A stretch of DNA of 64,000 nt from Octopus sinensis (taxonomy: Eukaryota), in NCBI RefSeq assembly GCF_006345805.1, contig NC_042998.1, positions 193,936,001 to 194,000,000 on the forward strand, in the 5' to 3' direction. The translations under genes and the position numbers were made by a program. The notes under the pieces are model-generated. The model saw only the letters and a list, made by a program, of their open reading frames with translations, did no database searches and was not told where the DNA came from. Shown piece after piece: positions 1-24,111 of this stretch. Every line of letters begins with the position of its first letter. Position 1 is the first letter of the stretch.

Positions 1-144
1 TAACCTGTAAGCTTAAATATTTAACATCATCTTCTTATAGAAGATTTTAACATTAATAACTTTACAGATTATTTAGATGATTTCTTATTTAAAGAGTTTG
101 TAATTAAATATCTTCAACATGGATGGAGTACTACATTCCATTAA

Positions 145-361
145 CCCTTTCGTTACCAACCCGGCTGAAACCGGCTCTGGCTCTGAGTACAAATGTCTTG
201 TTTTCATAAGTTTTGAATTAAAATCTTTCACCAAACCTAAGTCACAATTTATGTTCCTAACACTAGATTAATGATGAAGTTATTTTGCTAAATTCTTTGT
301 TATATTTAAAGTAATTGAAAGAAACAAAGAACAGCTCAAAATAAATACAGTAACAAAAGGG
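145..361. mobile_element. piggyBac-like MITE, family 1
   Basis: TTAA on both sides (141-144, 362-365); termini CCCTTTCGTTAC / GTAACAAAAGGG; related copies at 18463, 44230 and 60562. Confidence 0.8.
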
Positions 362-496
362 TTAATGGAAGTTTTTGGTGATAAAATCAAATAAACAGGC
401 TAAAATGTTAAGTATAAACAGCCAGAGTAGCTGATGCAACAACACTCTATAAAAAATTCCTCCAGAACAACAAGGAAATTCTTGAGTTTGACTTAC

Positions 497-560
497 CTTG
501 AACCTGTGGATACCTTCCTAATTTTCATCCGCATACAATTAGTTCAGCATAAGGATACAT
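497..560 (-). CDS. SELENOF: Selenoprotein F coding exon 3 containing the Sec (TGA) codon at 527-525
   Basis: Acceptor tatttcaaAG (562-561), donor GTAAGT (496-491); 64 nt = MYPYAELIVCG-TGA-KLGRYPQVQ+1 nt, matching vertebrate Sep15 LEVCGUKLGRFPQVQ. Absent from the ORF track because of the TGA. Confidence 0.95.
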
Positions 561-969
561 CTTTGAAATATAACAAAAAGGTAACAAAATTTTTAAGTAA
601 AGATAATATCAAAAATATTTGATACAGGTTAAATTTATTTATTTTATATCATTCAATGTGTATACATTTTTGAGAGGATACCCTGTATATATAATAATGA
701 TGATGATGATATTTGATATTAAATACTTGTACACTTTTAAGTTATTAAATGGTATTTAAATGGTATATAAAATGTAAGTAAAAAAATATTTGTTCATATA
801 CTGTATAGTCTCTAAGTTGAAATCCCATCAGACTTAGTTTTGTGTTTCACTCTGCTAGAGATGATAAGTAGCAGTAATATAATGAGGTTGATTCAAATAA
901 CAATAACTACTCCATTCAACAATTCATCTTAACTTAGGGAACAAATTAATATGTGTAGATTTTGCCTGT

Positions 970-1330
970 AGGGTGCCAAGAACACCATCCGAGCATGATC
1001 GTTGCCAGAGCAGCCAACTGGCTTCTGTACTCATGGCACGTAACAGACTACATTCGAGTGTTATCGTTACCAACGTCGCTTCACTGGCACCTGTGCTGGT
1101 GGCACGTGTAAAAAGATTCGAACGAGGTCATTGCCAGTACCACCTGAGTGGACCGCATGCCGGTGGCACGTAAAAAGCACCCACTACATTCTCGGAGTGG
1201 TTGGCATTAGGAAAGGCATCAAGACTGGAGCCTGGTGCAACCATCTGGTTGCCAGCCTCAGTCGAAATCGTCCAACCCATGCTAGCATGGAAAACGGACG
1301 ATGATGATGATGATGATAATGATGATGATT
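970..1330 (+). mobile_element. SINE family A (tail CCATGCTAGCATGGAAA..(GAT)n)
   Basis: Matches copies at 6772, 30235, 43450 and 59452. Confidence 0.85.
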
Positions 1331-3029
1331 TACTCTATCTTATATATTAATTGCATGCAAAAACAAAATATTTAATCATTACATGAAATATTAGGGAACA
1401 GTGTATGACTTTGGGAATTATAGTTTGGCCACATTTGTCATGTTGGATTTTACAACTGATATTATCATCATCACAATTTTATATGTGCTTTTCTATGCTG
1501 GCATGAATTGGAGGTTTTCCTGGGGACACAGTTTTACAGCTGGATGCACTTCTTGTTGCCCACCCTTACAATATGCATGGACACTGTGTACCTATTCTAA
1601 AACCACAGTAAGCTATTACTAAACAGACTAATAAAAACTCAAATATAATAAGTCCTTTATAAAAGAATACATTGGCTTGCATCTATTAGTTCAGAAGACA
1701 ATTCCAGGTGTAATCTAGGACGATCTACATTTCATTGATACAGATACAAACAAAAATGTGAACAGTTAGAATATTTTCTGCAGTGTGTCAGTCAGTACAT
1801 CATTACATTAAACACCAAAATAGTTTCTGAATCTCCAGACTAGAAGTTGTGATATCTTAAGCACCCTGGTATCTATTTTAACTAATAATATAATGAAATT
1901 ATTGTATACAGTGCTCCGAAAGTCCTCTCCCCCATTGGTTCATTGGCGCAAAGTCATATTCTTAAGGTTATAAACCTGGAAAAGGACAGGACAAGTTATT
2001 ACACCTGTAAAAGTATTAGGACCCTTTGATTACAGTTTTATTCAGGTAGACACCTACAGCCAATACACTTTTTTTTTTACACCTATTACACTCGTTTTTT
2101 TTTTGTTGTTGTTGTTGTTTTGGTGACCGGGAGTTAAAATAAACATTAACTGAATTTGTTTTTCAGAACCATGTTTTCTGTTTGTATAAAAATCAAAATA
2201 AGTAAATAAAAAAAAAGTTATTCCCAAACTGCTGGTTTATAAATGTGGCGGTCGCTCTATCTATTTGCTAGGAAAAGCAGACAGATGTTAGGTTAAACCT
2301 GGTAGTTTGTAAAGCCTCCAGAATGGTTCAAGATCAAAATACATATGGCATCGTTGAGTTAGATTTAATGAATATTGAATAGAGAACTATTTAATGGCAG
2401 TGCCCCAGCATGGCCACAGCTCGTGAGATGAAACTAAATGAAACGAAATGAACTGAATAAGAACAAAGAAATAATAGAGAACTGACGCAAGAACTAAGAA
2501 AAGGGAAATAAATTAACAGTTAGAGTCTTTTCTTTGAATATTTAGGAATATTTCTCAAATTGAGAATTTCCAAAAATTGCACCTATCCTGTACCCTCCGG
2601 GTACAGTGATGCGTTTAAGTATTAATTGCAGGTGTTAGCAGTCTTGCCCTCAGTAAACCCTCCTTGAGCAAGCTCCCAACCCCCTGACGAGGACGGTTAG
2701 CGGTAAGTGGTCGTATTTTAATATATACATTGAGCAAAATGTACATTTGTAGGTATTGACTAACGGAGAAGTCATCGCCATTAATGTACAGCGAAATACT
2801 GCGCTTAACAAATTATATTAACTTAATTTAAGGATCATAATTAATCATTTTCGTGGATGTAATTCTTTGAATTAAACTGAAAAATAAGTATTTAAGATTT
2901 TTTTCTGAAAGTTTGCTTGAAAATATTACTATTACTTCCCTTGACACAACACTTCCGCTTAATATGGGTTTCCTCCCTTGGCTTAGAATTTCTAAGAAAT
3001 ATTTATTCCACGTATTAATGTCGTCATAT

Positions 3030-3320
3030 TCATTCTCTCTATATATATCTCTTTCTTTCTTTTTTTCTCTCTCTCTCTTTCTTTCTTTTTCTCTCTCTCA
3101 CTCTCTTTCTTTCTTTCTTTCTTTTTTCTTTTTCTCTCTCTCTCTTTTTCTCTCTATCTCTCACTCTTTCTTTCTCTCTCTATCTCTCACTCTTTCTTTC
3201 TTTCTCTCTCTATCTCTCACTCTTTCTTTCTTTCTCTCTCTATCTCTCACTCTTTCTTTCTCTCTCTATCTCTCACTCTTTCTTTCTTCTCTCTCTCTCC
3301 CTCTCCCTCCCTCTCTCTCC
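3030..3320. repeat. Polypyrimidine (CT/CTTT) tract with a ~26-30-bp minisatellite unit
   Basis: About 5 copies of TATCTCTCACTCTTTCTTTC(TTTC)TCTCTC; explains spurious ORF 2913-3494. Confidence 0.9.
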
Positions 3321-4203
3321 ACGCTTAACACATTCCTTCACACTTACTCTATCCCTCCTGCTAAAAATCATAGAAATATTTTTCGAGTGTTATATGAATG
3401 TACGTCACTCGGAAATTTGGCAGCCGCATTACATGTTGCATATTCATACACCCCACCGCGATTCATTACATATCTTCTTAGTCAAATCACTTAACTCTAC
3501 ATGCCTTACTAATAAACTCAGTTGTCGTTGTTTAGTCCAATTTCGGCTCTGATCAAAAAGCATTCCAGCCGTGACAACCACATTATGTTTTTCACCTCCG
3601 TCGGACAAAATGTATTGCAATATTTGTTCTAGTTCGATACGTTCCGAAATCAACTTCATCCTTACGGAGACCGGGGCAATAAAATAGAGTACCTGTTAAG
3701 TACAGGAGCTGAAGGTATTGATTAACCCCTCATTTCAAAACTGATGGTGCCTAAAATAGAAACACTGAAGACGGCAGGGGGTGATCTAAGGGTTATCTGT
3801 CTGCTTTTCCTAGCAAATAGATAGAGCGACCGCCACATTTATAAACCAGCAGTTTGGGGAATAACTTTTTTTATATTTTTATTTTTTATAATTTTTTTTA
3901 CTTATTTTGATTTTCCTGATTTTCATACAAACAGAAAACATGGTTCTGAAAAAAAATTTAGTTAATGGTTACTTTAACTCCCGGTCATAAAAAAAAAAAA
4001 AAGTGTAATAGGTGTAAAAAAAAATGTGTATAAAAACGAGCGCCAACGGATCGGGAGAGGACTTTCGGAAAATTCGCAAGATCCGATTTTTCCCCTCATA
4101 ACTTTTAGGAAAAGGGATATCTTTTGATGAAATTTTATATAAATACCTTTCAAACGGCATAGATTACGATTATAAAGAACGGGATTCTACAAAACAATAT
4201 GAC

Positions 4204-4234
<31 letters not shown>

Positions 4235-5194
4235 ATATATATAAATTGCGAGGTTGATCCGGTTCTTGACTGAGGATAGAAAGCTTCGAATGACACGTCC
4301 TTGTTTTTTTTGTATCACCTATCTGGATGTTTTGTTGTCCCTTTTTGTATCACCTAGTTGTCCGGATGTTTTACGTTCTTGTCCCATTTTATATTATATA
4401 TATAGCGACGTACGTGCACTTTGTTCTCTTATATATGGCAGAGGTAAAGAATACGAACACCACCCGCTTTCGGCGTAACCCTAACCCTAAACACCCTGTG
4501 TACGTATTCTTTACTTTCGCTAAAAAATGTTAGTGGCAAGATATTTTGTGGGGATGAACGTTGTGTAAATAAACGTGCAAGTAGTCTATTATATTTTATT
4601 TTATCAAAAAAACTTCTCAATGAAGCAGTTCACAGATGTAAAAATTTGTAGTAATTTACAAAATGGTAGCTTGAGAGAATGAAATTTCTATTATGTGAAC
4701 ATATTATTATGTAGGTCCGCAAGTAAAATACCTGTAGTTATAACTTGTTGAAGTTATTTACTATATGCTTATTCTCTGCAAAATTACACATACGACTGGT
4801 GATAAGAAACCAATACATGTATTTAAGGGAAATTTTTTTTTAAATCCATAAAATACTAATAATATACTGATTAAAACTGAGGCGCTTAGTTTAGTTGAAT
4901 TGATGTTTTTTTTACCTCTTTTTTCTTTTTCACTATATATTTAATAATTTTTATATCAAGATAAAAGTATATATATATATAAATTAAAGTAGAGATAAAA
5001 CCACTATTAGGCAAATCAAACAATGAAAAACATAAACCAAACATAAAAATAAAAATAAATATAATATACAAAATATATAAAATATAAAATTTTAAAATTT
5101 AAATAGAGAGAGAGAGAGATTTGCATCATGAAAATGCTGTCACTCTTTAAAAATCTGGCCTTATAATAAATGAAAATAAATTAATACTCTATAA

Positions 5195-5540
5195 CAATGG
5201 TTCTCAACCATTTCTTACCTGTAGGACCCTTTGATTACAGTTTTACTCAGGTAGACCCCTCCAGCCAATTAATGTTTAAAAACTAAGTTTTATAGATGCT
5301 TCTTTCAAAATTCCTATTTTGTTTACCACATGTTCACTTGTGCAGGTTTGCAGTAGCACTCTCCAAGGGACCATGTTGAACTTTGTGGAGCGTTAAAAAA
5401 AGAAACCTAATTGGGTTTTTTTTTGGGGGGGGGGTTGTAATAAATACATGTAAAGCAAAATTTTTTTTCCTTGATCCCTAAAATACAACTGCAAACCCCA
5501 AAAAATATTATATGAACCCTCAGGGCTTATATGGTGCCTG
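5195..5540. mobile_element. Degenerate hAT-like MITE
   Basis: Begins caatGGTTCTCAACC, a hAT-type TIR start; right end decayed; no clear TSD. Confidence 0.45.
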
Positions 5541-6082
5541 GTTAGGGCCACAGCTCTGAGTTCAAATCCTGCTAGGATCAACTTTTCCTTTCATTCTTCT
5601 AGGGTACAAATAAGCATAAATGAAGTACTATGATCGATTCAATCAACTTTTCCTTTGCCTCTTAATTTGCAGCCTCAACATGATAAAGAGCTACAGAATA
5701 ACTGCTTATAGTATCTTCAGAGAAGTAGTTTAGTAATCAGACTAGTAAAAAATGACAGCTGCATCAAAAATTTAGCTAAGGGAGCACTCTCGTAAATAGT
5801 TGCACATCCTTGTAAAAATAACCGCCAATCTCCTCAAATGCCACCTTACTGTGTTAAAAAAATGAAAGGGCATACTGCACGATATAGGAAGGTCATGGAT
5901 GAAATGCCTTGGATAACAGATCTACTCAATGATCAGGAGTTGGTACAGAAAATTTCAACTCTAAACCCTCTATTTGTAATTAAGCTTATATTTCTTATTA
6001 ACTAAGAGCATACAACATACATGGCCAATGTGAATCATCGGGGAATTTTTTAGCAGCATGATATATTTGAGTTGGGGTTTAA

Positions 6083-6301
6083 CCCTTTAGTATTTAAACC
6101 GGCCATATCCGGCCAAAATAGCTAATCTGTTTTATGTTCAAACTGACTAGATCCAGGCTCTCACACCTACCCTACAATGTTATTCTACATTAGGTAATTA
6201 CACCATCAAGATCTTGAAGGTATGAGATAATGCATGATTAATTCAAATCAATGGGAATCAATAGGCATTATGTTTAATAGAATAATCTGAACACTAAAGG
6301 G
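6083..6301. mobile_element. piggyBac-like MITE, family 2
   Basis: TTAA flanks (6079-6082, 6302-6305); termini CCCTTTAGT / ACTAAAGGG; interior differs from family 1. Confidence 0.75.
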
Positions 6302-6771
6302 TTAAATGCTGTATAGCTTGTCACTAAATTTTTCTGTAATATTTATTGAAGAAGTTACAAACAATTAATTACATGGAAAAATGCGAGCATGAAAAGTCAT
6401 ATTCTTAAGATTATAAACATGGAAAAGGAGAGGAAAATTTATTACACCTGTAAAAGTATAGGACAAGCTATTACTTCTAGCAAAGTAAAGAATAAGAAAC
6501 TTTTTACTTAAAATATTGCAGCAAAGAATGTCAGTTCTAATTTATCACTCTTTACAGCTCTCATCTTTGAAATTTATTGTACAAAACTGTTCGGCTAATT
6601 TCTAAGTTTGTCTAATTAGTCACTTTTTTCTGTATTTAAGGTAATAAATTAGCCAAATTCTACTTAAATAAGTATAGTGCTATTTGTAAATTATAATAAA
6701 ATAAGTTTTAATATTCAAATTTTAATTTTAGCTGCAATAAAAATATTGCAGCTAAAATTAAAATTTGCAAG

Positions 6772-7153
6772 TAGGGTGCCAAGAGCACCATCCGAGCATG
6801 ATCATTGCCAGAGCAGCCAACTGGCTTCTGTGCTGGTGGCATGTAAAAGGGCACCATTCGAGCATGATCATTACCTGTGTCGCCTTACTGGCAACTGTGC
6901 CGGTGGCATGTGTAAAAAGATTCGAGCGGGGTCGTTGCCAGTACTACCTGACTGGCCCCGTGCTGGTGGTACGTAAAAGGCACCCACTACACTCTCGGAG
7001 TGGTTGGCATTAGGAAGGACATCCAGCTGTAGAAACTCTGCCAGATCAAGATTGGAGCCTGGTGCAACCATCTGGTTCGCCAGCCCTCGGTCAAAATCGT
7101 CCAACCCATGCCATCATGGAAAGCGGATGTTAAACAACGATGATGATGATGAT
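6772..7153 (+). mobile_element. SINE family A
   Basis: Collinear with 970-1330; (GAT)n tail. Confidence 0.85.
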
Positions 7154-7624
7154 CTTGTTAAAAAATATACATTTGCAACAGAGACAGTATTAATATCAAA
7201 AGGTAATATTCCTCCCCTCTTAAACATGGATGTTCTATTAGAACAAACTATACGGCAATAGTTCCCATGAAAGAAATCTCAAAGGCCTTTTGGTGCAATA
7301 TGAACAAGAATGTGTTTTGCCCCAAAAAACCAATATGAAAGTTTCTCTCATGGTAACTACCGTGGTATAGTTTGTTCTAACAGAACATCCACATTATAGT
7401 GAGGATAAATATTACCTGATAAACATCTTGTTCTTATAAATGGAATGGCTTTTACCAAATCTTCCTTCATAGAATCCCTTGATTATTTTCAATGTAGAAA
7501 ACAGTCAAATTAGTATTTGTGAAACTGGAAATTTTAATGCATTATATTACAATTTATATTTAGTTGGAGCTGGTACATTTTTCCTAACTCTTGCTCCAAT
7601 AAACCCAATAATTGCTTCTAACTC

Positions 7625-8017
7625 TGCCCACAAGGGGCTAAACATAGAGGAGACAAACGGATTAAGTCGATTACATCGACCCCCAGTGCATAACTGGTAC
7701 TTAATTTATCAACCCCGAAAGGATGAAAGGCAAAGTCGACCTTGGCGGAATTTGAACTCAGAACGTAGCGGCAGACAAAATACTTATTTCTTTATTACTC
7801 ACAAGGGGCGAAACATAGAGGGGACAAACAAGGACAGACATAGGTGTTAAGTCGATTACATCGACCCCAGTGCGTAACTGGTACTTAATTTATCGACCTC
7901 GAAAGGATGAAAGGCAAAGTTGACCTCGGAGGAATTTGAACTCAGAGCGTAACAACAGACAAAATACCACTAAGCATTTCACCTGGCGTGCTAACGTTTC
8001 TGCCAGCTCACCGCCTT
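7625..8017 (-). mobile_element. tRNA-derived SINE family C, internally duplicated
   Basis: Core CCTTTCATCCTTTCG(G/A)GGTCGATAAATTAAGTACCAG present twice; resembles the Nin-type central SINE domain as I recall it. Confidence 0.8.
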
Positions 8018-8419
8018 AAAACTTTATAACTCTGAATCAGGACTGACTAGGCTAAATAATAAGAAACTTAGTATAAGGTCTATTAATTATATAAGCTAGA
8101 AAAATATTGTCTTCATTTATCAGAAAAGTATGGGGAACAATTACATACATTTTGTCTTTATTCTGATGTCATCAGCAAAGCAAACCCTTTACTTGCCAAA
8201 GTAGCAAAAGAATCAATATGTAATTGCATAAGATCATACATTTATTAGAAAATATAAAAAAAAGAAATATTTAGAAATTACACTCAACACATTATATCTT
8301 GCTAGTATTTTGATGGTCCTTGCATTAAATATATTAAAATTTACTATTAAGAGTTGGGTTTTTTTCAGTTTTTGCCAGGGATACTATGGAAAACTGATGA
8401 GTTTATACATCCAACACCC

Positions 8420-10510
8420 TCTTGAGGCACTTTTCCTCAAACAGAATAACACCCTTTTGGATGGCTGGACACCAGGCACCGTGGTCAGAGGCAAGTGATT
8501 CCCAGCCACAGGCATCAAGGGAAGTTTTCAGGCTGTCCTTGTATCACCTCAGTAGCCTTCCAGGGTTTCTTGTGCCAGAAGCCAGCTCAGAGAAGAAGAT
8601 CGTCTTTGGTAGACACACGTTGTTCATTCAGACTACATGTCCGACCCACTGGAGCTGAGCCTTCATGATGAGGGCTTTGATCCCAGGCATTTCGGCTCTG
8701 CGAAGCACGTCAGTGTTGGAGACTCTGTCCTCCCAGGAAATTGCCAAGATTTGTTGCAAACAGCAGAAGTGGAACTGGTCAAGTACTCGCATTTGCCTCC
8801 TATATAACGTCCACGTCCCACAGCCGTAGAGCAGAGAGGTGATGATGACTGCCCTATAGACTGCCAGCTTGGTGGAAAGTCTGATGCCTCGTTCGGCCCA
8901 CACACATGTCCAAAGTCTGCCAAATGAAGCTCCTGCTTTTGCAAGCCTCATGGGGACATCTTTGTCCATGCTGCAGTTTGAGGACAGGCAGCTTCCCAGG
9001 TATGTAAAGCTCTCTACATTGTTCAGAGTTTTGCCCTCAATCTCAATCTGAGGCTCAGGAGGTGTCAGGCCAGGTGCAGGCTGAAGCATCACTTCAGTTT
9101 TCCGCAGGCTAATAGTCAGTCCGTAGGCCTTTGCTGTTTCTGCGAGACAAGTGGCAAGTTCTTGCAGGTCTGGTGCATTCAATGCTGTAAGCGCACAATC
9201 ATCTACAAACAGGAAGTCTCTCACTAGGGTGTCCAGAACTTTGGTTTTTTGCCTTCAGACATCTGAGGTCAAAGAATCGGCTGTCACATCTGTAGCGAAT
9301 AGTGACACCAGCATCAGACTTTGACAGGGCACAGAAGAGCATGGTGGCAAACATGAGGCTGAAGAGTATGGGAGCCATTATGCAGCATTGCTTCATGCTA
9401 TTGGAGACCGGGAATGGATCAGAGACATCTCCGTTTTCCACGATGCGAGCCATCATGCCATCATGCAATGACTGGATGATCCTGACGAGCTTTGGTGGGC
9501 AGCCCAGATTGGACAAAATATCCCACAGGACCTCTCGGCTGACAGTGCTAAAAGCCTTCGTCGGGTTCACGAAGAGGATGCAGAGGTTCTGGTTTCATTT
9601 ACAGCACTTCTCTTGTATCTGCCATACTGCAAAGACCATGTCTATTGTCCCCCTGTTGCTCCTAAATCCACACTGCCTCTCTGAGACCACGTCGTCCTGC
9701 AGGTGGTGTGTGATGCGGTTCAGAAAAACACAGGCCATGATCTTTCCTGCGATGCTCAGCAATGAGATGCCTCTTTGGTTGTCACATGAAGCTCTGTCCT
9801 CCTTGTTCTTGTACAGATGCACTATGTTGGCATCCTTGAAGTCCTGTGGCACTGACCCTTCGTCCCAGAACTGCTGTATCAACTCAGTCAACTCGTATTC
9901 TTTCGTATTTCTTTCATGTTTCGACTGCGTGGTAGATGACCAGTCAGCTGCGGTATGCTGACAGGATGAGATGAAGCAAGCTTTCTTTAGATCACCTTTT
10001 CTAGACCCTTCCTCCTAAGCGGCGGAGCAGTGCTATCCCTGAAGAGGGCTGCTCTGTCGTCAGAGTGGCTGCCAAACTATGCCCTTGCTCTGGTAGGCTG
10101 CAGAACAACCATCCTGCCCTGACTGCTCAAGTGCAGGTCCATGGGCCATCCTGCACTTGCCACCGTCACCACTTGCCCATCGCCTCAGGACTTGGAAAAA
10201 GAAGAAGTAGAGTGGGTAAAGTCACTGAATCCTGGGCATGAGAACTGTGAAGGCCTTGGGTTGCCCAAGCCCAGGAACCCACTCTCGGTCCAGCCGATCT
10301 AGCCAGGAGGGACACAGGACAACACATTCTAGCCACGAATGGACTGCAAGCACTGCCAGAGAGATGATGGACTTCTCCAGATTTGGATACGGTTTACTCC
10401 CCAGCCTTTGACTAACCAAAAAAACCTACCCACAAGGCAGTGGGAGACTCTTGGAGGGTGGGGACGTCTCACTACCCGTACAGGGCCAGAATGACCTGCC
10501 CACTGCTCAT
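8420..10510 (-). mobile_element. RTE-clade LINE: 5' region plus frameshifted RT, endonuclease deleted
   Basis: ORF pieces 9891-9595 (FWDEGSVPQDFKDANIVHLYKNK..CDNQRGISLLS), 9570-9199 and 9224-8628 (RDFLFVDDCAL, FTYLGS, LLYGCGTW); the N-terminal stub joins directly to the pre-RT region near 9900. Confidence 0.9.
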
Positions 10511-10926
10511 ATGATATTTACAATTTAAAAAAAAGAACACAGTATATACAATAGTCACACAGTCCAAAATGCAACATACACAATACACACACACACAAAC
10601 ACACACATAGTTGAATGGCCATTGACTACGTTGTAGTTCCTCCGCCCTTTGACAGGTCTTATTTTTTGTCCCGCAGGGTTTTCAACAAGCACCCACCTCA
10701 CCAAGCAAGCCTGGTGGGGTTGCCAGTTTAGTCGCCGATGACCCGACCATGGAACAGGTTGTACTGGGCTACATGGTACCAGTAGCACTCGAGAGCGACC
10801 TGACATACAAGTGCAGGGCCTAAAGGAAGTAACAATTTTTCTCAATGCACCAATGATCCTGGCAGCTTGCTGCCTAATGCAACAGATTAATGATAAAGAA
10901 ATTGTTTGTTTATCAAACCACCTCAC

Positions 10927-11100
10927 CTTTAATGCTTTCTCTCCCTCTTGGTCCATTTGACAACATTTCGAACAGCTGTCTTTGAGAGGTGTTAGCTGAA
11001 ATTTGTCTAATTCATTACACGAACTACATAACAAACTATTGTACATGCCCAGATGTTCACACTGTAACGGTGTCAGCTCTTGGCTGTCTGCCAAGCATAT
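10927..11100 (-). CDS. SELENOF: Selenoprotein F coding exon 2, Cys-rich domain
   Basis: Acceptor ttttattatttctattccAG (11102-11101), donor GTGAGG (10926-10921); 174 nt = ICLADSQELTPLQCEHLGMYNSLLCSSCNELDKFQLTPLKDSCSKCCQMDQEGEKALK, matching the Sep15 pattern C..LG...LLCSSC..L.KF.L..L...C..CCQ with the six conserved Cys. Confidence 0.95.
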
Positions 11101-11431
11101 CTGGAATAGAAATAATAAAAAGACTTAAGTGATATTAAATTTTTGAAGGTGTTCAAATGTGTGTGTGTGTGTGTCTATATACATATACATACATATATAA
11201 GTTCAGCAAAAATTTAGATTCAGATGAATATGGTACTTAAGTTAAAGGCACCAGAATTTGGTATGGTATTATCCATATAAATCAAATTGGGTGATTATTG
11301 TCAATTTAATTTTTAAAATTCCATATGTGGCTGAAGAGTCCTCTACATTTTAAAACTTACATTGTTTAATTAAATGAAGTAGCATGAAACGATTGTACTA
11401 CACTACCTTTGGATATCCTTGTTGCTTATTT

Positions 11432-11473
<42 letters not shown>

Positions 11474-11630
11474 GCATACAATTGCAGTGTGGAAGATGTT
11501 TATAAATCATTTAAGAACACACAAAAACCATTAAATTCACTTCAACATTTAAATTAATTTGTCAAAATACTTTCGTCGCTTTGAGACCGCACCTGTTCAC
11601 TGACAAAACTCCGTATATATATATAAACTC

Positions 11631-11680
<50 letters not shown>

Positions 11681-11741
11681 CCGTATAAATATGTATATAT
11701 ATACATATATATACATACATACAAATATATACATACATATA

Positions 11742-12246
11742 CAGGGTTATTAAAAAAGAGAGAGCAGATTTTAAGTTTATTTTTGAAACAAACAGTAATT
11801 TCTTGATAGGGGAAGGTTTGAAGATTATTTTTAGGTAGTATGCACTCAACATGAGCACCGTGGGCACCAGTGCTTTTTCCTTTACAAATGTAACCTTTTT
11901 CTTTGAAATTTTTATGCCATTCATAGATTTGCTTGTGACAAGGTGGATTTTTATCGAATTGGCAGCAAAATTCATGTTGCACTTGCACAATTGTTTCGCA
12001 TTTCTCAAACTGCAGAACACAAAAGGGATTACACAAATGAAAAGAATACAACTTTAAATAAATTGAACAAAATGAAACATTAAAACAAAATTAAAATATA
12101 TTATTTCAGGCTTAATTCAATTGATCATGGTCAGCTATAAACTTTAAACCTTCCCCTATAAAGAAATATGTAGAATGTGTTTGTGTCTCTTACCATTTGG
12201 TTTAAAAATAAATTTGAAATCTGCTCTTTCCTTTTGAATAACCCCG
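11742..12246 (-). mobile_element. Internally deleted Tc1/mariner element with an N-terminal transposase HTH relic
   Basis: TA flanks; ~50-bp imperfect TIRs (CAGGGTTATTAAAAAAGAGAGAGCAGATTT vs the reverse complement at the right end); minus frame FCVLQFEKCETIVQVQHEFCCQFDKNPPCHKQIYEWHKNFKEKGYICKGKSTG resembles Tc1/mariner N-termini. Confidence 0.75.
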
Positions 12247-12339
12247 TATATATACATACATATATACCTATGTATACATATATATACATACATAAACATA
12301 TATAAATATATGTATATGATGTATAAACATATATACATA

Positions 12340-15160
12340 TCATCATCATTTAACATCCACTGTCCGTGCTCTCATGGACTGGATGGTTTGACCAGATCTG
12401 GCAAGCTGGAGTCCTGCACCAGACTCCAGTCCAATTTGGCATGGCTTCTACAGATGGATGCCCTTCCTAACATCAACCACTTTACAGGGTGTGCTGGGTG
12501 TTTTTACATGGCACCATATGGACACTATTATGTGGCACAACACAGTCACTTTTACATGACACCACATGGGTGCTTTTACGTGTAATTGCCATGAGTGCTT
12601 TTTACATGGCACCAGCACAGGACTCTTGCAAGTCAAACCTCACCACCAAGGGAACCATTCTTAACAAGTATGCTGTGGAGTACAGGTCTTCTTGAGTACA
12701 GCAAGGCACCAGACTTCTCAGTCCTTTATCATCTTGAATGAAATATTCAGCATCCTTAAGTCATTCTTCAGTACTTCGTCATATATCTTCCTGGGTTTCC
12801 CACTTCCACATGTTCCATCTACTTTGAGAGATTGGTATTTCTTTATGGAGCCTTCAGCATCCATCCACATCACATAACCAAACCAGTGCAGTGTTCTCTA
12901 TTAGTTGCTGTGTGCAACTAATTCCTCTTATGCCTAACTTCTCTCTCAAAACACTAGCACTCTGTCAAACACATACACTTACATTGCACATCCAGCTTTT
13001 TGCATGTCCATAGCTTACACTGGGTACACTGCAATGGAGTTCTACCTACACCTTTCCTACAAATCGAACAGAACCTGTCAGTTTCTTGCTTATTAGGACC
13101 TTTGCTAAGTTAACCTTAAGGCCCTTAGATCCAATGTTTTGCTTCCACAGCTGGAATTTCTCTTCTAGCTCTGATATGGAATCTGCTATGAGGGTAAGAT
13201 CATCAGCATATAGTAGTTCACAGAAGATACCAGTGTTGAATTCCTCTGTTATGTCCTGGAGGATAATGATGAAATGGAGGGGACTAAGGACTGAGCCTTG
13301 ATGAACCCCTACCTGTACACCAAATTCTTTGTTGCACTCATGTTTAACTCTCATCTTACAGACAGTGTCTTTGTACATGGCTTGTACAGCTTTCACCAGC
13401 CACTCATCTATCCCTAGCCTTTTCAGCACTCACCGTATCACACAGCAAGGTATTCTATCAAAGGCTTTCTCTATAGATCAACAAATGCCAAGTATAATGG
13501 TTTATTCTTAGCTAAGTACTTCTTTTACAGTTGCCTGACTATGAAAATTGCAGCAGTAGTGCTTCTTCTATGGACAAAGTTGAACTTTATTTCATCTAGC
13601 TTAATTCTGCTCCTAATTAATTGGGCTATAACACTCTCAGTAATTTTCATCACCCGGTTCAAGAGTTTGGTTCTTTTATGATTGCTTCTATCTAAAGTAT
13701 AACCCTTACCCTTGTAGGAGCTAACAATAATGCTGTTACACCAGTCCTTGGGTATTACACCTTCCTGAATCACCTGGTTGTCTATGTGGGTGACTAGCCC
13801 ACATACCAGATTTTTTGAGCATCATAGCCTTGATTCCATGATTCTGGATGGATCAGGGGCTTTCCCAGTCTTCATGGTTTCAATTGCCTTATCTACCACA
13901 CTGCTGTCCACTTGGATAGCTGGTCCCTCTGTTGGATTCACATGAGGGAGACTTTCTTTGTCCCATTCATTCTCTACATACAACAGTCCCACATAGTAAC
14001 TTTTCCATGCCTCTTTCTGTCCACATCACTAAGTGCAAGCATACCATTATCCATCCGCACACACTTCTTTCCTACAATATCTCGATTCTCATTGAACACT
14101 TCAAGTCTTTGATCTTCACACTGTAGGACTTTGGCAACCTCTTCTTTTCTGATTCTACCCAAGCCAGATAATCCTGATGTTTAGCCTCCCTTTTAGCCTT
14201 TTGATATGATTCCTTGCTAGCCCCTCTTTTCCACCCTTTCCAGACCCATCTCTTCTCTTTTATGGCCCTGTCAACAGTATTGCTCAACCATCACATCACC
14301 CTTGGTCTGGCAGAGACTTTGCTCTAACTAGAAATTTGATTCATTACCCTTAGTAGAGTGTCTCATAGGAACTTCCAGTTGTCATCTACGTCATGTTTCT
14401 ATTTCTTTCTCCTTCTCATCAAAGCCCTCATTAAGAACATTGGATTACATTTCAGGATCTTTCTGGCCCTAAGCCTGAAGTCACTAACCACTAACTTACA
14501 TTAAGATGAACATTCTTCACCTTGGAAATCTTTGCATTTTCAAGCATATATCTATTCCTGTCTGGTGAAGATGCAGTCAATTTGACTAGTTTGTCCCCCA
14601 GGTTGATAAGTGATCAGATGGTTGACAAGTTTTTTGAAGTTTGTGTTGCAGACCAGTAAGCCATGAGCATCACAAAACACCAGCAGCCTTGCTCCCTCCT
14701 CATTTCTGGAGCCAAAGCCATAGCCACCATGCGTACCCTGAAATCCATTAAAGTCTTTTCCAACATGTCCGTTGAAATTTCCTGCCATAAGAAGAATGTC
14801 ATCGTCTTTTGTCGTTGATGTAGTCCTCAGAAGGGATTCGTAGAAGTGGACCTTCTGAGTATCTGCGAGTCTGGTGTGCAGAGCATATGCAGAGATAACT
14901 GACACAGTTATCAAACAAGGCTATTCTTAGCTTAATAATCCTATCACATACTCTAACTACCTCAATCACATTATCCACCAATTTCTCTGCTAGTAGAATA
15001 CCTAGCCACCCTGGCTCTCATTGTTGCCTAGCCAAAAGTTTGTATCTATGCCCTTTGCCCATAAGCAGTCTAGCTTATACCTCTTGGACACGGCATACAT
15101 CTACATGTCTCCGCTCAAGCATTTCAGCTATCTCTCCAGACCTTTCATAATGCCAACAAT
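12340..15160 (-). mobile_element. Degenerate RTE-like LINE (APE endonuclease + RT) with 3' tail
   Basis: 14914-14552 VISAYA..GNFNGHVG..GYGFGSRNEEG..IDCIF; 13773-13525 IPKDWCNSIIV..YKGKG; 13429-13046 GVHQGSVLSP..LLYADDL; many stops and frameshifts. Confidence 0.9.
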
Positions 15161-15639
15161 GATTGTGTCAACTCTCTATTGATAGATAAATTAATTTCAG
15201 CTTAGATCATTAAACTTTGTAGTGAGATATGCCTCCGTCATGGGAAGATGTGAATGGTGCACCCACTGCTCCTAAGAGGAAACAAAATGTGGATGCAGAG
15301 CAGACAGCAGCTGCTGAACAACAGTCTTTTTTTGGAAATGGCACAGTAGGTTGTAAGACAGTTGACTTGGTTCCATCGGACACTGGGTTTGAGAAACATG
15401 TACCAACACTCAAGGCCACCTCAAGCAACAAAAGATCCAAGGTAGCCACCTCTGACACCTCTACATATGCCAGACCAGTGGTCACTATCAACACACTATA
15501 TGTTGCACCAGTAGTTCTGCTGAACATCTGGGGCCTTGTAATTTCCCACCAATGCAAAAACCCAATATGTGAAAGACTTAGTGACATGCAATCAAGCAAT
15601 ATGCATGGCACTGACAGAAACACATCTGAGCACTGAGAT

Positions 15640-16610
15640 ATCAGATGTTGAGATACACATGCCAAAGCATGTTGGATTGTGAACCGACAGGAGAGAAAAG
15701 ACTCATGGTGAAGTTGCAGTGTACATCCAGGAAGATGCCACACCTGTAATCCTGCTGTCAGACTCAAACTCAGTCTGTGACACTCTGGTGGTACATATTA
15801 AACAGATGAAAATGGTAATATTTTCTACATGTCACCTACGAGATTCTCCAAATCATGGGGACTCATTCAAAGAGAGTCTTACAAAGATGGAAGAAGTGTT
15901 AACCAACATTGATGACCACCTTCACACACTTCTTTTAGAAGCCTTCAACCTAAATAATATCAAATAGCCTGGGTACCACCTTCTCTTGGGTATGTCACTG
16001 CATGAAGAGGCAAGCAGAGGGTCTGTTTGACCTCACAAACATGCTCTTTATGGAGCGAATAGTGCTCCACCCAACAAGGGGTAAAAATGTTTTGGACCTC
16101 TGTTTCACAAATAACATGGTACTCATCCATAATGTTAAGGTAACACTGACGATTCTTTCAGATCATAACTTAATAGAAGTAACAATGTATGGTCTGCAGA
16201 AAACTGCAGGCATGCAAGCTACAAGAAGCAGCCGATTCCTCTCCAGCCTGAACTTTCATAAAGCTGATTGGAAGGATATTGAGAACGAGGTCATGAAATA
16301 AAGCTACATAAAGCACTTTATGGCAGCCATGCATAACATGCACAGTAAGTTTGCTCCAGAGAGAATGCCAAACCAACAGTAAAATATAATTCCCAGGAAT
16401 CGAATTCTTATGAGATGATGAGCAAAGATCTCAAACCGTTTAAAGGGGCCACTAAAGGATCCTATCTCAAACAAACATTGCTCAAGATCAAAAATGACCT
16501 CATAGGAAGGGCAGAGAAAGAAGGTAGGGCTGTCAAAAATATAAAGACAAATCCCAAATCTTTCAATAGATTTGCAAAAGATTCTACTTCAGTTCAATAC
16601 AAGATAGGGC
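15640..16610 (+). mobile_element. CR1/L2-group LINE endonuclease fragment
   Basis: Frames 15719-15967 and 16002-16301 contain HPTRGKNVLDLCFTN..LSDHNLIEV..LNFHKADW; interrupted; no RT. Confidence 0.65.
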
Positions 16611-18042
16611 TATATATATTATTGTGCCTGGGGAGAGTTGTTCTGTTTTAATGCCTTATTAATTAAAGCACTCACCAGTTCGATTTCCACTCTGGACTGG
16701 ATTGCCTATGTTCAGTCTACTGCAGAATGAAGGTCTCAGCATGTTCTCTCCACCAACCACAATCTGATGTGGAGGCCATGAATTTGAGTTTGAGATGATG
16801 CTGGTTTAGTGAACCGACTCTGCCACACTGGCTTGACAAGGTTTGGAGGGTGACCTGAAGGTGCTATATCAGAACATGATGGGTGCTGTAGAACTCCCCA
16901 GCCAAGCTCTCAAATGGCATTTTTAGTCAAATTAGTGACATAGGAGCAAGTGTTGTGTTGAAGCATGCCATGTCACTGGTGGGGGTCATTTCTTCACATA
17001 ACTTTATTGAAAGAGGAATTAAGAACAAACAGATTACGAGCTTAAGTGGCCTTCAATTTTATTTAACCAGTGGTAATAACAGTGTATGTATGAGACATTT
17101 TATTTCACGTGGATGTAGGCTTCTTTTACTCAGCAAAATAAGAAAGCTGTACATATCATCGCGAAAAAGTCTATAAGATACAAAATCTATGATTTAAATA
17201 AATGTACATTGGATAATAGATACACTACGACTGGAAAAAAATAGACTCGATGGACTGTCCGATCCTCCCAACCTGGGCAAAACAACAACAAATTTGAAGT
17301 ATAGGAACAGACAAGATTAGCTACGCTGAGTTAGATCGAACACAATTCCTAATAAGTAGAATTATAGCCATATTGAAAGGTGTTAAATAAGAGTGGTCAG
17401 CAAAAGTTATCACAAGTAAAACGAAATACAAACTTCAGGTTAAAAAAAGAAGAAAAAAGAGGCAGTGCCTACGAGAACCAAACTCCTTAAATAAAAATAT
17501 AATTGAATTTAGAAGACAGCACATGAAAAGAATCGGAAAAGGGGATAACTGAAATGTCCACGGGTTACATTCTTCACACAAGATATAAAAGTTAATTCAA
17601 AATCACTTTTGCGACAAGAGACACAAATAAATATTTAAGTTAAGTTTACGTGTCACAACCAGAACAGCAGACGAGACGAGTGCGTGTGTGAGTTGCCTCC
17701 GTTGATCGCTTGGCCGGTAACAAATAGCAGCCGAGTCTTCAAATTACGCCTTACTGTCTTAAATAAAGGGCAAATTTTGGCAATATGGGCCCTAATAGAT
17801 TCAAAATATTTTTTTAAAGGCTGATGGTTACGACTGGAATATTTTTGACCATTGATTTGCTCGTTAAGGGTTTCAATATCGAAACGTGGTATTGTGAGGG
17901 AGTGATGCTTGGAGGAACAAAACGAGAGGAATGTTCCGCTGCTAAACGAAAAGAATGAAATCATGATGAGATATTTATGTCTGCTTTTCAAATTGGTGAT
18001 CAGAGGGGGAAGAAAATGTGTAAAATGTTGTAAAATACTTAC

Positions 18043-18087
18043 ATATAACAACACCAACAGGGAAATAATTCCCGGTAGGTCAGCCAT
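18043..18087 (-). CDS. SELENOF: Selenoprotein F (Sep15) coding exon 1, signal peptide start MADLPGIISLLVLLY
   Basis: ATG at 18087 in AAGATGGC context; 45 nt, hydrophobic; followed by a GTAAGT donor (18042-18037); phase 0 joins exon 2 in frame and completes a signal-peptide-like N-terminus. Assigned by fit rather than by homology. Confidence 0.8.
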
Positions 18088-18120: not shown

Positions 18121-18462
18121 GAACATTTGTACGTTGCATTTAGTTTATTGCACTTATAGACATTGGCTTGGCATTGTATATATTTTTGCTGCTTCTACAC
18201 CAGATGTTATTCCTTACATACATACAAACACACACATACATGAACACTCACACACGTGTGTGTTCAAAACAGTCCAGTGATGGCCATCCTTTCTTTTTAG
18301 TGAATATAGGATTACATTGGCACTGTCATGCTTTTAGTTGTCAGAAGTGAAAGTAGAAAATGGAATGTACGCCACACATTCTTTAATACACTTCCCTTTT
18401 GATTACCAACTCTGAGATCACCTTGATTCTTTGATACAAAATTACCGTTTAAAATTATTCAA

Positions 18463-22959: not shown

Positions 22960-24111
22960 AGACATAACTTGCTTCCGCGCTTGCGTCAGTGTATTCAGTG
23001 TGTTGATTTTTGACGAGATGGATGGATTATTTTGAGATGCTTGGCAGCGGTTTGTCAGTGAGTGTTGTACCAGTGGAAAGGAATGTATTCAAGCCTTAGT
23101 GATTATAAACTGTCTTCAGCAGAGGAGGAGCTCGTTAAGGCAGTAAATAGAATGAACAAGCATTTGGAAAGAGTAAAGAGTTTTGCTGAGGCTACAGAGG
23201 TGAAGAAAAGGGAAGTGGACCTAGCAGGACTGAAGGAGCTGAGTAAGATGACACAGAAGGTGGGCGGTGACATAAAGTTATTACCCCCAAAAAGGGTTAT
23301 AGTAAATATGGAAAAGAAGACCATTACCTACAAGGTGTACTCAGTGGAGCGGATGGAGATGAAAAAAGTAGAAAAAACTCTGAAGGGGCTTTTGAAGGAA
23401 GTGACATATATAGCGAAAAGAAATGGTATGGGACGGTGGTTGTCCAGTTTAGGACAGCGGAGGAGGCAAAGAGGCTGGCAAGTACAACAGTGAGAACAGA
23501 GGAAGTAGTACTTGTACCCACGTACCTTGGAAGAAAGACTTCTAAGGTGAGGGCAGAAGGAACCCCACCTAATATAGAAGTGGCTTGGGTTGCAGCAGCC
23601 GTCCTCATGGGTTGTGAGGAGGAGGTGGATGTCCTCCAAGCCAGAGACGGAGGAAGGAGGATATAAAGAAAAAACATTGGAAATCATCATTCAAGCAGAG
23701 GTGAAGCAACTGGAAAATTTGGTGGACACGGTGACATTGGGAGAAATAGTATTGAGAGTATGGGTAGAGGGCAGAGTTCCGCGATGCTTTAAATGTGGCC
23801 AAGAAGGCCACATTAGAGCTCACTGCCCTCTACAGAGGAAAACGACAGAAGAAGTGGTGCTGGAGACGGAGGAGAAAAAGAAAGAAGTACAGATAGATAG
23901 AAGGAACAAGGAGGATGAATGGACATTGACAGAGAATAAAAGGAAAAAGAGAAAGAGGAGGAAGAACAGTCAGTTCTCCATCCCACCCAAGACCACTCAG
24001 ACCCACCCTCCCCATAAAGACACCAAACTCATCCACCCCTCCTCTACCCACAGGAAAAAAAAAGAAGAAAGAACAGACACCGCAAAATTTACAAGACCTC
24101 TCCCTCGGTGA
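22960..24111 (+). mobile_element. L1/Tx1-like ORF1 (gag-like) relic with CCHC zinc knuckle
   Basis: Overlapping frames 23062-23493, 23436-23666 and 23590-24111 give a basic N-terminus, then VVQFRTAEEAKRL.., then RVWVEGRVPRCFKCGQEGHIRAHC and a Lys/Arg-rich tail; at least 2 frameshifts. Confidence 0.7.

What the first reader, a model, noticed from the sequence alone, without database searches (positions are those of the whole stretch)
497..560. Hidden selenoprotein: in-frame TGA in the CxU redox motif of a spliced SELENOF gene
Seen: three minus-strand exons (45, 174 and 64 nt; introns of 6942 and 10366 nt) splice in frame and place TGA (527-525) as codon 85 in ...IVCG-TGA-KLGRYPQVQ; the sequence beyond the TGA stays Sep15-like up to a perfect GTAAGT donor. 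Established: Sep15/SELENOF is an ER thioredoxin-like selenoprotein with a CxU motif and a Cys-rich UGGT-binding domain, and it needs a 3'UTR SECIS. Inference: this is an intact Sec-coding gene that automated annotation would truncate or miss. The family is known, but this is the main functional signal in the window.
Basis: partly seen in the sequence, partly recalled or inferred. Interest (0 to 1): 0.7.

Follow-up and report, generated by a model that had tools for sequence, protein, structure and literature searches.

The report
Octopus selenoprotein F gene, first three exons
The window holds the first three exons of an ordinary octopus selenoprotein F (Sep15) gene whose in-frame TGA encodes selenocysteine; the family is well known, and the only practical point is that the public Octopus vulgaris annotation wrongly ends the protein at that TGA.

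Summary
Three minus-strand exons (18087-18043, 11100-10927, 560-497) have AG/GT boundaries and splice in frame. TGA 527-525 is codon 85, in IVCG-TGA-KLGRYPQVQ. The 94-residue product has the six-cysteine pattern of the human SEP15 UGGT-binding domain, followed by a CxU motif. Four distant invertebrate mRNAs carry TGA at the same position and stay conserved beyond it (25 synonymous against 1 non-synonymous codon change). The window is about 95% identical to an Octopus vulgaris chromosome. There the same three exons are annotated as a 97-aa "hypothetical protein" that stops exactly at the TGA. In that locus a fourth, last exon lies 937 nt downstream and completes the Sep15/SelM domain (Pfam 93.8 bits). 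A SECIS element (Rfam SECIS_1, 35.3 bits against a gathering score of 35) follows 165 nt after the TAA. Exon 4 and the SECIS fall about 0.7 and 1.0 kb beyond the window's left edge, so they could not be checked for the window's own genome. This is a known gene family working by a known mechanism. It is an annotation correction, not a discovery.

The parts
18043..18087 (-). Exon 1 coding part (45 nt). It encodes MADLPGIISLLVLLY, the start of a hydrophobic signal-peptide-like N-terminus. The ATG at 18087-18085 has A at -3 and G at +4. The donor is GTAAGT at 18042-18037.
   Evidence: 100% identical to O. vulgaris L001. The same junction is used in O. vulgaris protein P0001.
18124..18126 (-). Alternative in-frame upstream ATG. 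It would add MFYVTSGCRQTTK and is the start used in the O. vulgaris annotation. Its context is weak (C at -3, T at +4).
11101..18042 (-). Intron 1 (6942 nt, GT...AG).
   Evidence: It holds stretches with no counterpart in O. vulgaris (about 11185-12360 and 14635-17142).
10927..11100 (-). Exon 2 (174 nt). It encodes the end of the signal peptide and the cysteine-rich domain, with Cys at residues 29, 40, 43, 58, 61 and 62 (spacing C-x10-C-x2-C-x14-C-x2-CC).
   Evidence: tblastn with human SELENOF gives E = 6e-7. The spacing equals human mature C10, C21, C24, C39, C42, C43 (PMC12363830). 174/174 identical to O. vulgaris.
561..10926 (-). Intron 2 (10366 nt, GT...AG). It contains a U4atac snRNA gene and a reverse-transcriptase fragment.
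497..560 (-). Exon 3 (64 nt, ends in phase 1). It encodes MYPYAELIVCG-U-KLGRYPQVQ, the start of the thioredoxin-like Sep15/SelM domain with the CxU redox motif. The donor is GTAAGT at 496-491.
   Evidence: Pfam PF08806 positions 4-18 match residues 80-94. 64/64 identical to O. vulgaris.
525..527 (-). TGA, the selenocysteine codon (codon 85 counted from ATG 18087).
   Evidence: TGA sits at the aligned position in L002-L007. The synonymous-change pattern continues after it.
1..496 (-). First 496 nt of intron 3, cut by the window edge. It includes a 217-nt piggyBac-like MITE (145-361) that is absent from O. vulgaris. Exon 4 and the SECIS are expected about 0.7 and 1.0 kb beyond position 1.

Best explanation
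Window 497-18087 (minus strand) is the 5' three-quarters of an intact SELENOF (Sep15, 15-kDa selenoprotein) gene of an Octopus species closely related to O. vulgaris. Exon 1 and the start of exon 2 give a signal peptide. Exon 2 gives the six-cysteine domain that in mammals tethers SEP15 to the ER folding sensor UGGT. Exon 3 opens the thioredoxin-like domain with a Cys-Gly-Sec (CxU) redox centre. The UGA is decoded as selenocysteine because a SECIS stem-loop in the 3'UTR recruits the Sec insertion machinery (SBP2, eEFSec, Sec-tRNA). The last exon and the SECIS lie just beyond the left edge of the window.

Shown here: exon structure, reading frame, homology, conservation beyond the UGA, and exon 4 plus SECIS in the O. 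vulgaris orthologue.

Inferred: that the window's own genome has the same exon 4 and SECIS; that Sec is really inserted; and that the protein is an ER-resident, UGGT-associated oxidoreductase as in mammals.
For: - Exon and frame anatomy.
- The only close database protein is O. vulgaris CAI9717026.1, which UniRef names Selenoprotein F. It is 100% identical and ends at the TGA.
- The window is 91-97% identical to that locus, but 100% over 343 exonic and 5'UTR bases. The chance of no difference at 3% divergence is about 3e-5 (my calculation).
- Exon 4 in O. vulgaris has acceptor TTTCAG and the right phase.
- The composite 153-aa protein scores 93.8 bits on Pfam PF08806 (cut-off 26) and E = 2e-23 to the Drosophila Sep15 structure 2A4H.
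- Rfam SECIS_1 scores 35.3 bits (gathering 35, E = 1.9e-5) 165 nt after the TAA. It has AUGA, a 10-bp helix II, an AAA apical bulge and a GA quartet.
- Homologous intron-less mRNAs from metatranscriptomes all carry TGA at the CxU position and end at TAA or TAG.
- My own pattern scan finds SECIS-like elements in three of the four distinct mRNAs.
- After the TGA there are 25 synonymous against 1 non-synonymous codon differences.
- The cysteine spacing is identical to the human cysteine-rich domain.
Against: - Exon 4 and the SECIS are not in the window, so the window's own copy could in principle be broken downstream.
- The window-only fragment scores below the Pfam cut-off (16.8 against 26 bits), because only 15 residues of the domain are present.
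- The SECIS score in O. vulgaris is only just at the gathering threshold.
- My scan found no SECIS in L006.
- There is no transcript or protein evidence for this species.
- The start codon is ambiguous (18087 or 18126).
Confidence: 0.93

Rival explanations
1. The TGA is a genuine stop codon. The gene would then make only a short secreted or ER protein of 84-97 residues, consisting of the cysteine-rich domain, exactly as the O. vulgaris annotation says.
For: The public gene model ends there. The UGA lies 28 nt upstream of the last exon junction, so an mRNA terminated there would probably escape nonsense-mediated decay (inference).
Against: The nine codons after the TGA are conserved at the protein level, with almost only synonymous changes, in four distant species. 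The reading frame continues through a correctly phased exon 4 that completes a 93.8-bit Sep15/SelM domain. A SECIS lies in the 3'UTR. Ending a CDS at the Sec UGA is a documented annotation error class (PMC12822975).
Confidence: 0.03
2. The window's copy is a decaying or truncated gene, a unitary pseudogene or one that has lost exon 4 or the SECIS, even though the O. vulgaris orthologue is intact.
For: The downstream quarter of the gene cannot be seen. Intron 3 has acquired a MITE insertion relative to O. vulgaris.
Against: All three visible exons, their splice sites and the start context are intact. They are 100% identical to O. vulgaris while introns differ by 3-9%, which indicates continuing purifying selection. 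The MITE is intronic, 136 nt from the donor.
Confidence: 0.03
3. It belongs to a sister family, SELENOM or SELENOE/Fep15, rather than SELENOF.
For: The Pfam domain PF08806 is shared by Sep15 and SelM. The mouse SelM structure 2A2P is also hit (E = 2.7e-5).
Against: The N-terminal six-cysteine domain with human SEP15 spacing is present. The motif is CxU, not the CxxU of SelM. The match to Drosophila Sep15 is far stronger (E = 2e-23 against 2.7e-5). From my own knowledge, SelM and Fep15 lack the cysteine-rich domain.
Confidence: 0.01

Closest known systems
Human/mouse SELENOF (SEP15, 15-kDa selenoprotein)
   Same: Same domain order: signal peptide, then a six-cysteine domain with identical spacing (C-x10-C-x2-C-x14-C-x2-CC), then a thioredoxin-like domain with a CGU redox motif followed by KLGR[FY]PQVQAF. 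In the orthologous locus the SECIS is in the 3'UTR and there is no KDEL-type C-terminus. tblastn hits across exons 2-4.
   Different: The octopus gene has four coding exons, whereas I recall five in human. The linker between the CC pair and Sec is one residue longer. The Sec codon is in the penultimate exon, 28 nt from the last junction. Identity to human is only about 35% in the cysteine-rich domain and about 54-65% in the redox domain.
Octopus vulgaris CAI9717026.1 / UniRef100_A0AA36AKD6 ('Hypothetical predicted protein'; UniRef name Selenoprotein F)
   Same: Orthologous locus with the same three exons. The protein is 100% identical over the 84 residues before Sec.
   Different: The deposited model stops at the Sec TGA and starts 13 codons further upstream. 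It lacks the 68 C-terminal residues, including most of the redox domain. The genomic DNA differs from the window by about 5% and by several transposon insertions.
Drosophila melanogaster Sep15 (PDB 2A4H)
   Same: Thioredoxin-like Sep15 domain. E = 2e-23 over residues 65-152 of the composite protein.
   Different: The solved fly chain reads ...CTCKF... at the redox motif, with Cys where the octopus gene has the TGA. From my own knowledge the native fly protein is a Cys homologue, so it needs no SECIS.
SELENOM (PDB 2A2P)
   Same: Shares Pfam PF08806 and the fold (E = 2.7e-5).
   Different: From my own knowledge SELENOM has a CxxU motif, no cysteine-rich UGGT-binding domain and its own ER-retention tail. 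The octopus protein has CxU plus the cysteine-rich domain.

Membership tests
SELENOF / Sep15 | Thioredoxin-like Sep15/SelM redox domain (Pfam PF08806). | tested here: met
   The window fragment alone scores 16.8 bits over profile positions 4-18. That is below the 26-bit cut-off because the domain is cut by the window edge. With the orthologous exon 4 from O. vulgaris it scores 93.8 bits over positions 4-74 of 75, and E = 2e-23 to 2A4H.
SELENOF / Sep15 | In-frame UGA at the second redox position of a C-x-U motif, aligned with the family's Sec. | tested here: met
   TGA 527-525 sits in VCG-TGA-KLGR. It is in the same column as the TGA of L002-L007 and matches human ...VCGUKLGRFPQVQ (human sequence from memory).
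SELENOF / Sep15 | Coding conservation continues 3' of the UGA. | tested here: met
   25 synonymous against 1 non-synonymous codon differences in the nine codons after the TGA, compared with four distant homologues.
SELENOF / Sep15 | N-terminal cysteine-rich (UGGT-binding) domain with six conserved Cys forming three disulfides. | tested here: met
   Cys 29, 40, 43, 58, 61 and 62 have the same spacing as human mature C10, C21, C24, C39, C42 and C43 (PMC12363830). Binding to UGGT itself was not tested.
SELENOF / Sep15 | SECIS element in the 3'UTR of the same mRNA (this window's gene). | not testable with these tools
   The 3'UTR lies beyond window position 1. blastn with the O. vulgaris exon 4 and 3'UTR finds no counterpart in the window. 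The source genome could not be extended.
SELENOF / Sep15 | SECIS element in the 3'UTR of the orthologue. | tested here: met
   Rfam SECIS_1 scores 35.3 bits (gathering 35) at L001 27568-27632, 165 nt after the stop. Its AUGA, AA and GA features were confirmed by my own scan. SECIS-like elements occur in L002, L003 and L004.
SELENOF / Sep15 | ER targeting: N-terminal signal peptide and no KDEL-type retention signal (retention is through UGGT). | tested here: inconclusive
   A hydrophobic stretch IISLLVLLYICLA follows MADLPG. The O. vulgaris C-terminus is ...HERLMK, without KDEL or HDEL. No signal-peptide predictor was available.
SELENOF / Sep15 | Actual selenocysteine incorporation and oxidoreductase activity. 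| not testable with these tools
   This needs 75Se labelling, mass spectrometry or an enzymatic assay.
SELENOM | CxxU motif and absence of the cysteine-rich domain. | tested here: not met
   The motif is C-G-U and the cysteine-rich domain is present. The match to SelM is much weaker than to Sep15.

The most novel reading that the evidence does not exclude
In octopus the Sec UGA sits only 28 nt upstream of the last exon junction, so an mRNA read as 'stop' there should escape nonsense-mediated decay. The gene might therefore have two outputs that depend on selenium supply. One is full-length SELENOF. The other is an 84-residue protein made of the cysteine-rich domain only, which could still bind UGGT and so modulate or compete with the full-length co-chaperone. 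Nothing here tests this idea. It rests on the exon geometry and on the general 50-55-nt rule for nonsense-mediated decay.
Probability: 0.08. Interest if true: 0.4.

Novelty: already known. Interest (0 to 1): 0.15.

Why it matters
The value is mainly for annotation quality. The public O. vulgaris model, and probably those of related cephalopods, ends at the Sec codon and loses the redox domain. This is the "Stop codon" class of selenoprotein misannotation described for vertebrates in PMC12822975. Related errors appear in Paralvinella (Sec-exon sequence replaced by unrelated residues) and Tegillarca (Sec exon skipped). A corrected 153-residue model with U at position 85 would be useful for cephalopod selenoproteome inventories and proteomics search databases. 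It does not change the understanding of SELENOF or of Sec decoding.

Tried and rejected
- **Rfam on the whole window at gathering threshold.** It found no SECIS. This is uninformative for two reasons. The 3'UTR is outside the window. The same filters also missed the real O. vulgaris SECIS in a 10-kb scan and found it only in a 451-nt scan.
- **Rfam on six homologous mRNAs at E <= 0.1.** No hits. My own pattern scan then found SECIS-like elements in L002, L003 and L004 but none in L006. That scan is not a validated SECIS predictor.
- **PDB sequence search with the 94-aa window fragment.** It returned only chance hits, because just 15 residues of the solved domain are present. The composite protein hits 2A4H and 2A2P.
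- **Look-up of contigs encoding the 84-aa spliced product.** I hoped for octopus transcript contigs. The tool turned the look-up away and I did not try it any other way.
- **Search of the window beyond 18.2 kb for further genes.** It turned up only retroelement debris (a reverse-transcriptase fragment and a zinc-knuckle ORF) and no tRNA. No eukaryotic gene finder was available, so other spliced genes cannot be excluded.
- **Steps not run.** I ran neither structure prediction nor the large representative search. Family membership was already clear, so the shared compute was not justified.
- **Species of origin.** It was not determined. The window differs from O. vulgaris GCA_951406725.2 by about 5%, so it is a close congener, possibly O. 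sinensis. That name is a guess.

Full report
**1. Observation**

| Exon | Coordinates | Length | Boundaries |
|---|---|---|---|
| 1 | 18087-18043 | 45 nt | starts at an ATG with A at -3 and G at +4; donor GTAAGT |
| 2 | 11100-10927 | 174 nt | acceptor TTCCAG; donor GTGAGG |
| 3 | 560-497 | 64 nt | acceptor TTCAAAG; donor GTAAGT |

- The introns are 6942 and 10366 nt.
- The 283 spliced bases give MADLPGIISLLVLLYICLADSQELTPLQCEHLGMYNSLLCSSCNELDKFQLTPLKDSCSKCCQMDQEGEKALKMYPYAELIVCG*KLGRYPQVQ.
- TGA 527-525 is codon 85, and one base is left over (phase 1).
- The window is 37% G+C and looks eukaryotic, with microsatellites and retroelement fragments.

**2. Origin of the window**

- A search of 5.8 billion protein clusters returned one close hit. 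It is Octopus vulgaris CAI9717026.1, 97 aa, deposited as "Hypothetical predicted protein" and named Selenoprotein F by UniRef.
- That protein is 100% identical to the window's product over the first 84 of its 94 residues (89% of the query) and ends at ...IVCG, exactly at the TGA. It starts at an in-frame ATG 13 codons upstream (window 18126-18124).
- The encoding locus was fetched as L001 (O. vulgaris chromosome OX597815.1, 16622517-16658774).
- The window aligns collinearly with L001 at 91-97% identity, with several insertions and deletions. The window therefore comes from a close Octopus relative, not from that assembly.
- The 343 exonic and 5'UTR bases compared are 100% identical, while adjacent intron is about 97% identical. 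At 3% divergence the chance of no difference in 343 bases is about 3e-5 (my calculation), so the exons are under purifying selection.

**3. Is the TGA read through?**

Three lines of evidence say that it is.

(a) The rest of the gene in O. vulgaris.
- A fourth exon starts 937 nt after the exon 3 donor, at L001 27224, behind a TTTCAG acceptor.
- The leftover G joins CT to give Ala. The frame then runs AFVKSARTQQFPGLKIKYTRGADPTIHLLNENREIVETLGIEKWNTDSVEAFFHERLMK to a TAA.
- The composite 153-residue protein scores 93.8 bits on Pfam PF08806 (Sep15/SelM redox domain; cut-off 26) across 71 of 75 profile positions.
- It also matches the Drosophila Sep15 NMR structure 2A4H at E = 2e-23.

(b) The SECIS element.
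- It lies 165 nt after that TAA. Rfam SECIS_1 matches L001 27568-27632 at 35.3 bits (gathering 35; E = 1.9e-5 for the 451 nt searched).
- It has the AUGA core, a 10-bp helix II, unpaired As 11 nt after the core, a small apical stem (form 2) and the 3' GA.

(c) Distant homologues.
- Metatranscriptome gene calls P0002-P0007 show W at the Sec position.
- Reading the four of them that were fetched shows that the W is a TGA in each. These are intron-less, mRNA-like contigs of 1.1-1.5 kb (L002-L007; P0004 and P0006 were not looked up). The frame continues from the TGA to a TAA or TAG.
- In the nine codons after the TGA, four distinct homologues differ from the window by 25 synonymous and only 1 non-synonymous codon change. 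That is the signature of translated sequence.
- My simple pattern scan also finds SECIS-like hairpins in the 3'UTRs of L002, L003 and L004 but not L006.

**4. Family assignment**

- The six cysteines of exon 2 (residues 29, 40, 43, 58, 61, 62) have exactly the spacing of the human SEP15 cysteine-rich domain. In human these are mature C10, C21, C24, C39, C42 and C43, and they form three disulfides in the UGGT-binding domain (PMC12363830).
- The redox motif is CxU, not the CxxU of SelM.
- The match to Sep15 is far stronger than to SelM.
- The sequence is therefore SELENOF, not SELENOM and not the fish-specific SELENOE.
- The mechanism is taken from the literature on the mammalian protein (PMC9183203, PMC11348098, listed). 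It is an ER-lumenal thiol/selenol oxidoreductase held on UGGT by its cysteine-rich domain, and it assists quality control of disulfide-rich glycoproteins. For octopus this is inferred, not shown.

**5. What cannot be shown from the window**

- Window position 1 corresponds to about L001 26558. Exon 4 should therefore lie about 0.7 kb, and the SECIS about 1.0 kb, beyond the left edge.
- blastn with that O. vulgaris stretch finds only an unrelated repeat in the window.
- Intactness of the window's own 3' end is thus an inference from the orthologue and from the perfect conservation of the visible exons.
- Junction usage rests on the independent O. vulgaris gene model (same junctions) and on the contiguous alignment to intron-less homologues. 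No RNA-seq was available.
I did not pursue it another way.
- The start codon is unresolved. ATG 18087 has the better context and aligns with the N-termini of homologues. The deposited model uses ATG 18126.

**6. Novelty**

- SELENOF and its decoding mechanism are textbook knowledge, and UniRef already labels the octopus locus Selenoprotein F.
- The new element is only the corrected gene model. No full-length octopus SELENOF was found among the clusters searched.
- The deposited model belongs to the "Stop codon" misannotation class described in PMC12822975.
- Genome annotations of Paralvinella palmiformis and Tegillarca granosa also mishandle the Sec exon.
- I rate this as already known, with low interest (0.15).

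**7. Seen in passing**

- A full-length U4atac minor-spliceosome snRNA gene lies in intron 2 on the same strand. It is perfectly conserved with O. vulgaris.
- A piggyBac-like MITE with TTAA duplications sits in intron 3 and is absent from O. vulgaris.
- There is retroelement debris elsewhere in the window.
- The Sec UGA is only 28 nt from the last exon junction. By the usual rule, termination there would not trigger nonsense-mediated decay. This is the basis of the only mildly novel, and untested, reading offered.

Noticed in passing
window 2566-2697 (-): Full-length U4atac minor-spliceosomal snRNA gene (Rfam RF00618, 83.8 bits against gathering 53, model positions 1-132 of 132, Sm-like AATTTTTGG near the 3' end). 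It lies inside SELENOF intron 2 on the same strand. It is 132/132 identical to O. vulgaris, and its 200-nt flanks are 98.5-100% identical. As I recall, human RNU4ATAC is also intronic (in CLASP1), so the arrangement is not unusual.
   Followed up: partly
window 145-361 (TTAA at 141-144 and 362-365): A 217-nt piggyBac-like MITE with terminal inverted repeats CCCTTTYGTTAC and a TTAA target duplication, in SELENOF intron 3. The stretch 143-364 has no counterpart at the orthologous O. vulgaris site, so the insertion is lineage-specific. Further termini of the same family lie at 18459, 44433 and 60770.
   Followed up: partly
The O. vulgaris annotation uses it (MFYVTSGCRQTTK-MADLPG...). Its context is weak (C at -3, T at +4), against A at -3 and G at +4 for ATG 18087. 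Which one is used depends on the transcription start site, which is unknown.
   Followed up: partly
window 8628-9224 (-); 23590-24111 (+): Retroelement debris. One ORF has the C-terminal part of a reverse-transcriptase domain (PF00078, 24.9 bits, below cut-off) inside intron 2. Another has a CCHC zinc knuckle upstream of the gene.
   Followed up: partly
window about 11185-12360 and 14635-17142: Stretches of intron 1 with no collinear match in O. vulgaris. They account for the longer gene in the window: 17.6 kb against 16.3 kb from the upstream ATG to the TGA. They are probably transposon insertions, but I did not examine them.
   Followed up: no
L002-L007 (metatranscriptome contigs); proteins P0002-P0007: The gene calls in the protein collection show W at the Sec position. 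In the four that were fetched (P0002, P0003, P0005, P0007) the codon is TGA. The W therefore hides that these are selenoproteins.
   Followed up: yes
P0008 (Paralvinella palmiformis), P0009 (Tegillarca granosa): The annotated SELENOF homologues in these two genomes replace or skip the Sec-containing exon. P0008 reads ...LSVISICRARAFVKSD, and P0009 jumps from ...DDDQA to LKSDRVKQF. These are further selenoprotein misannotations.
   Followed up: partly
L001 27568-27632: Method note. The O. vulgaris SECIS (35.3 bits) was not reported when 10 kb were scanned at E <= 1. It appeared only when 451 nt were scanned. Negative SECIS results from long Rfam scans should not be trusted.
   Followed up: yes
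L001 28791-28925: A near-perfect palindromic hairpin downstream of the O. vulgaris gene matches several unrelated miRNA families on both strands, all far below their gathering scores. It is most likely a repeat-derived hairpin and not a miRNA.
   Followed up: no
window 525-527 relative to the donor at 497: The Sec UGA lies 28 nt upstream of what is the last exon junction in O. vulgaris. That is less than the usual 50-55 nt, so termination at the UGA would be predicted to escape nonsense-mediated decay. This is inference only.
   Followed up: no
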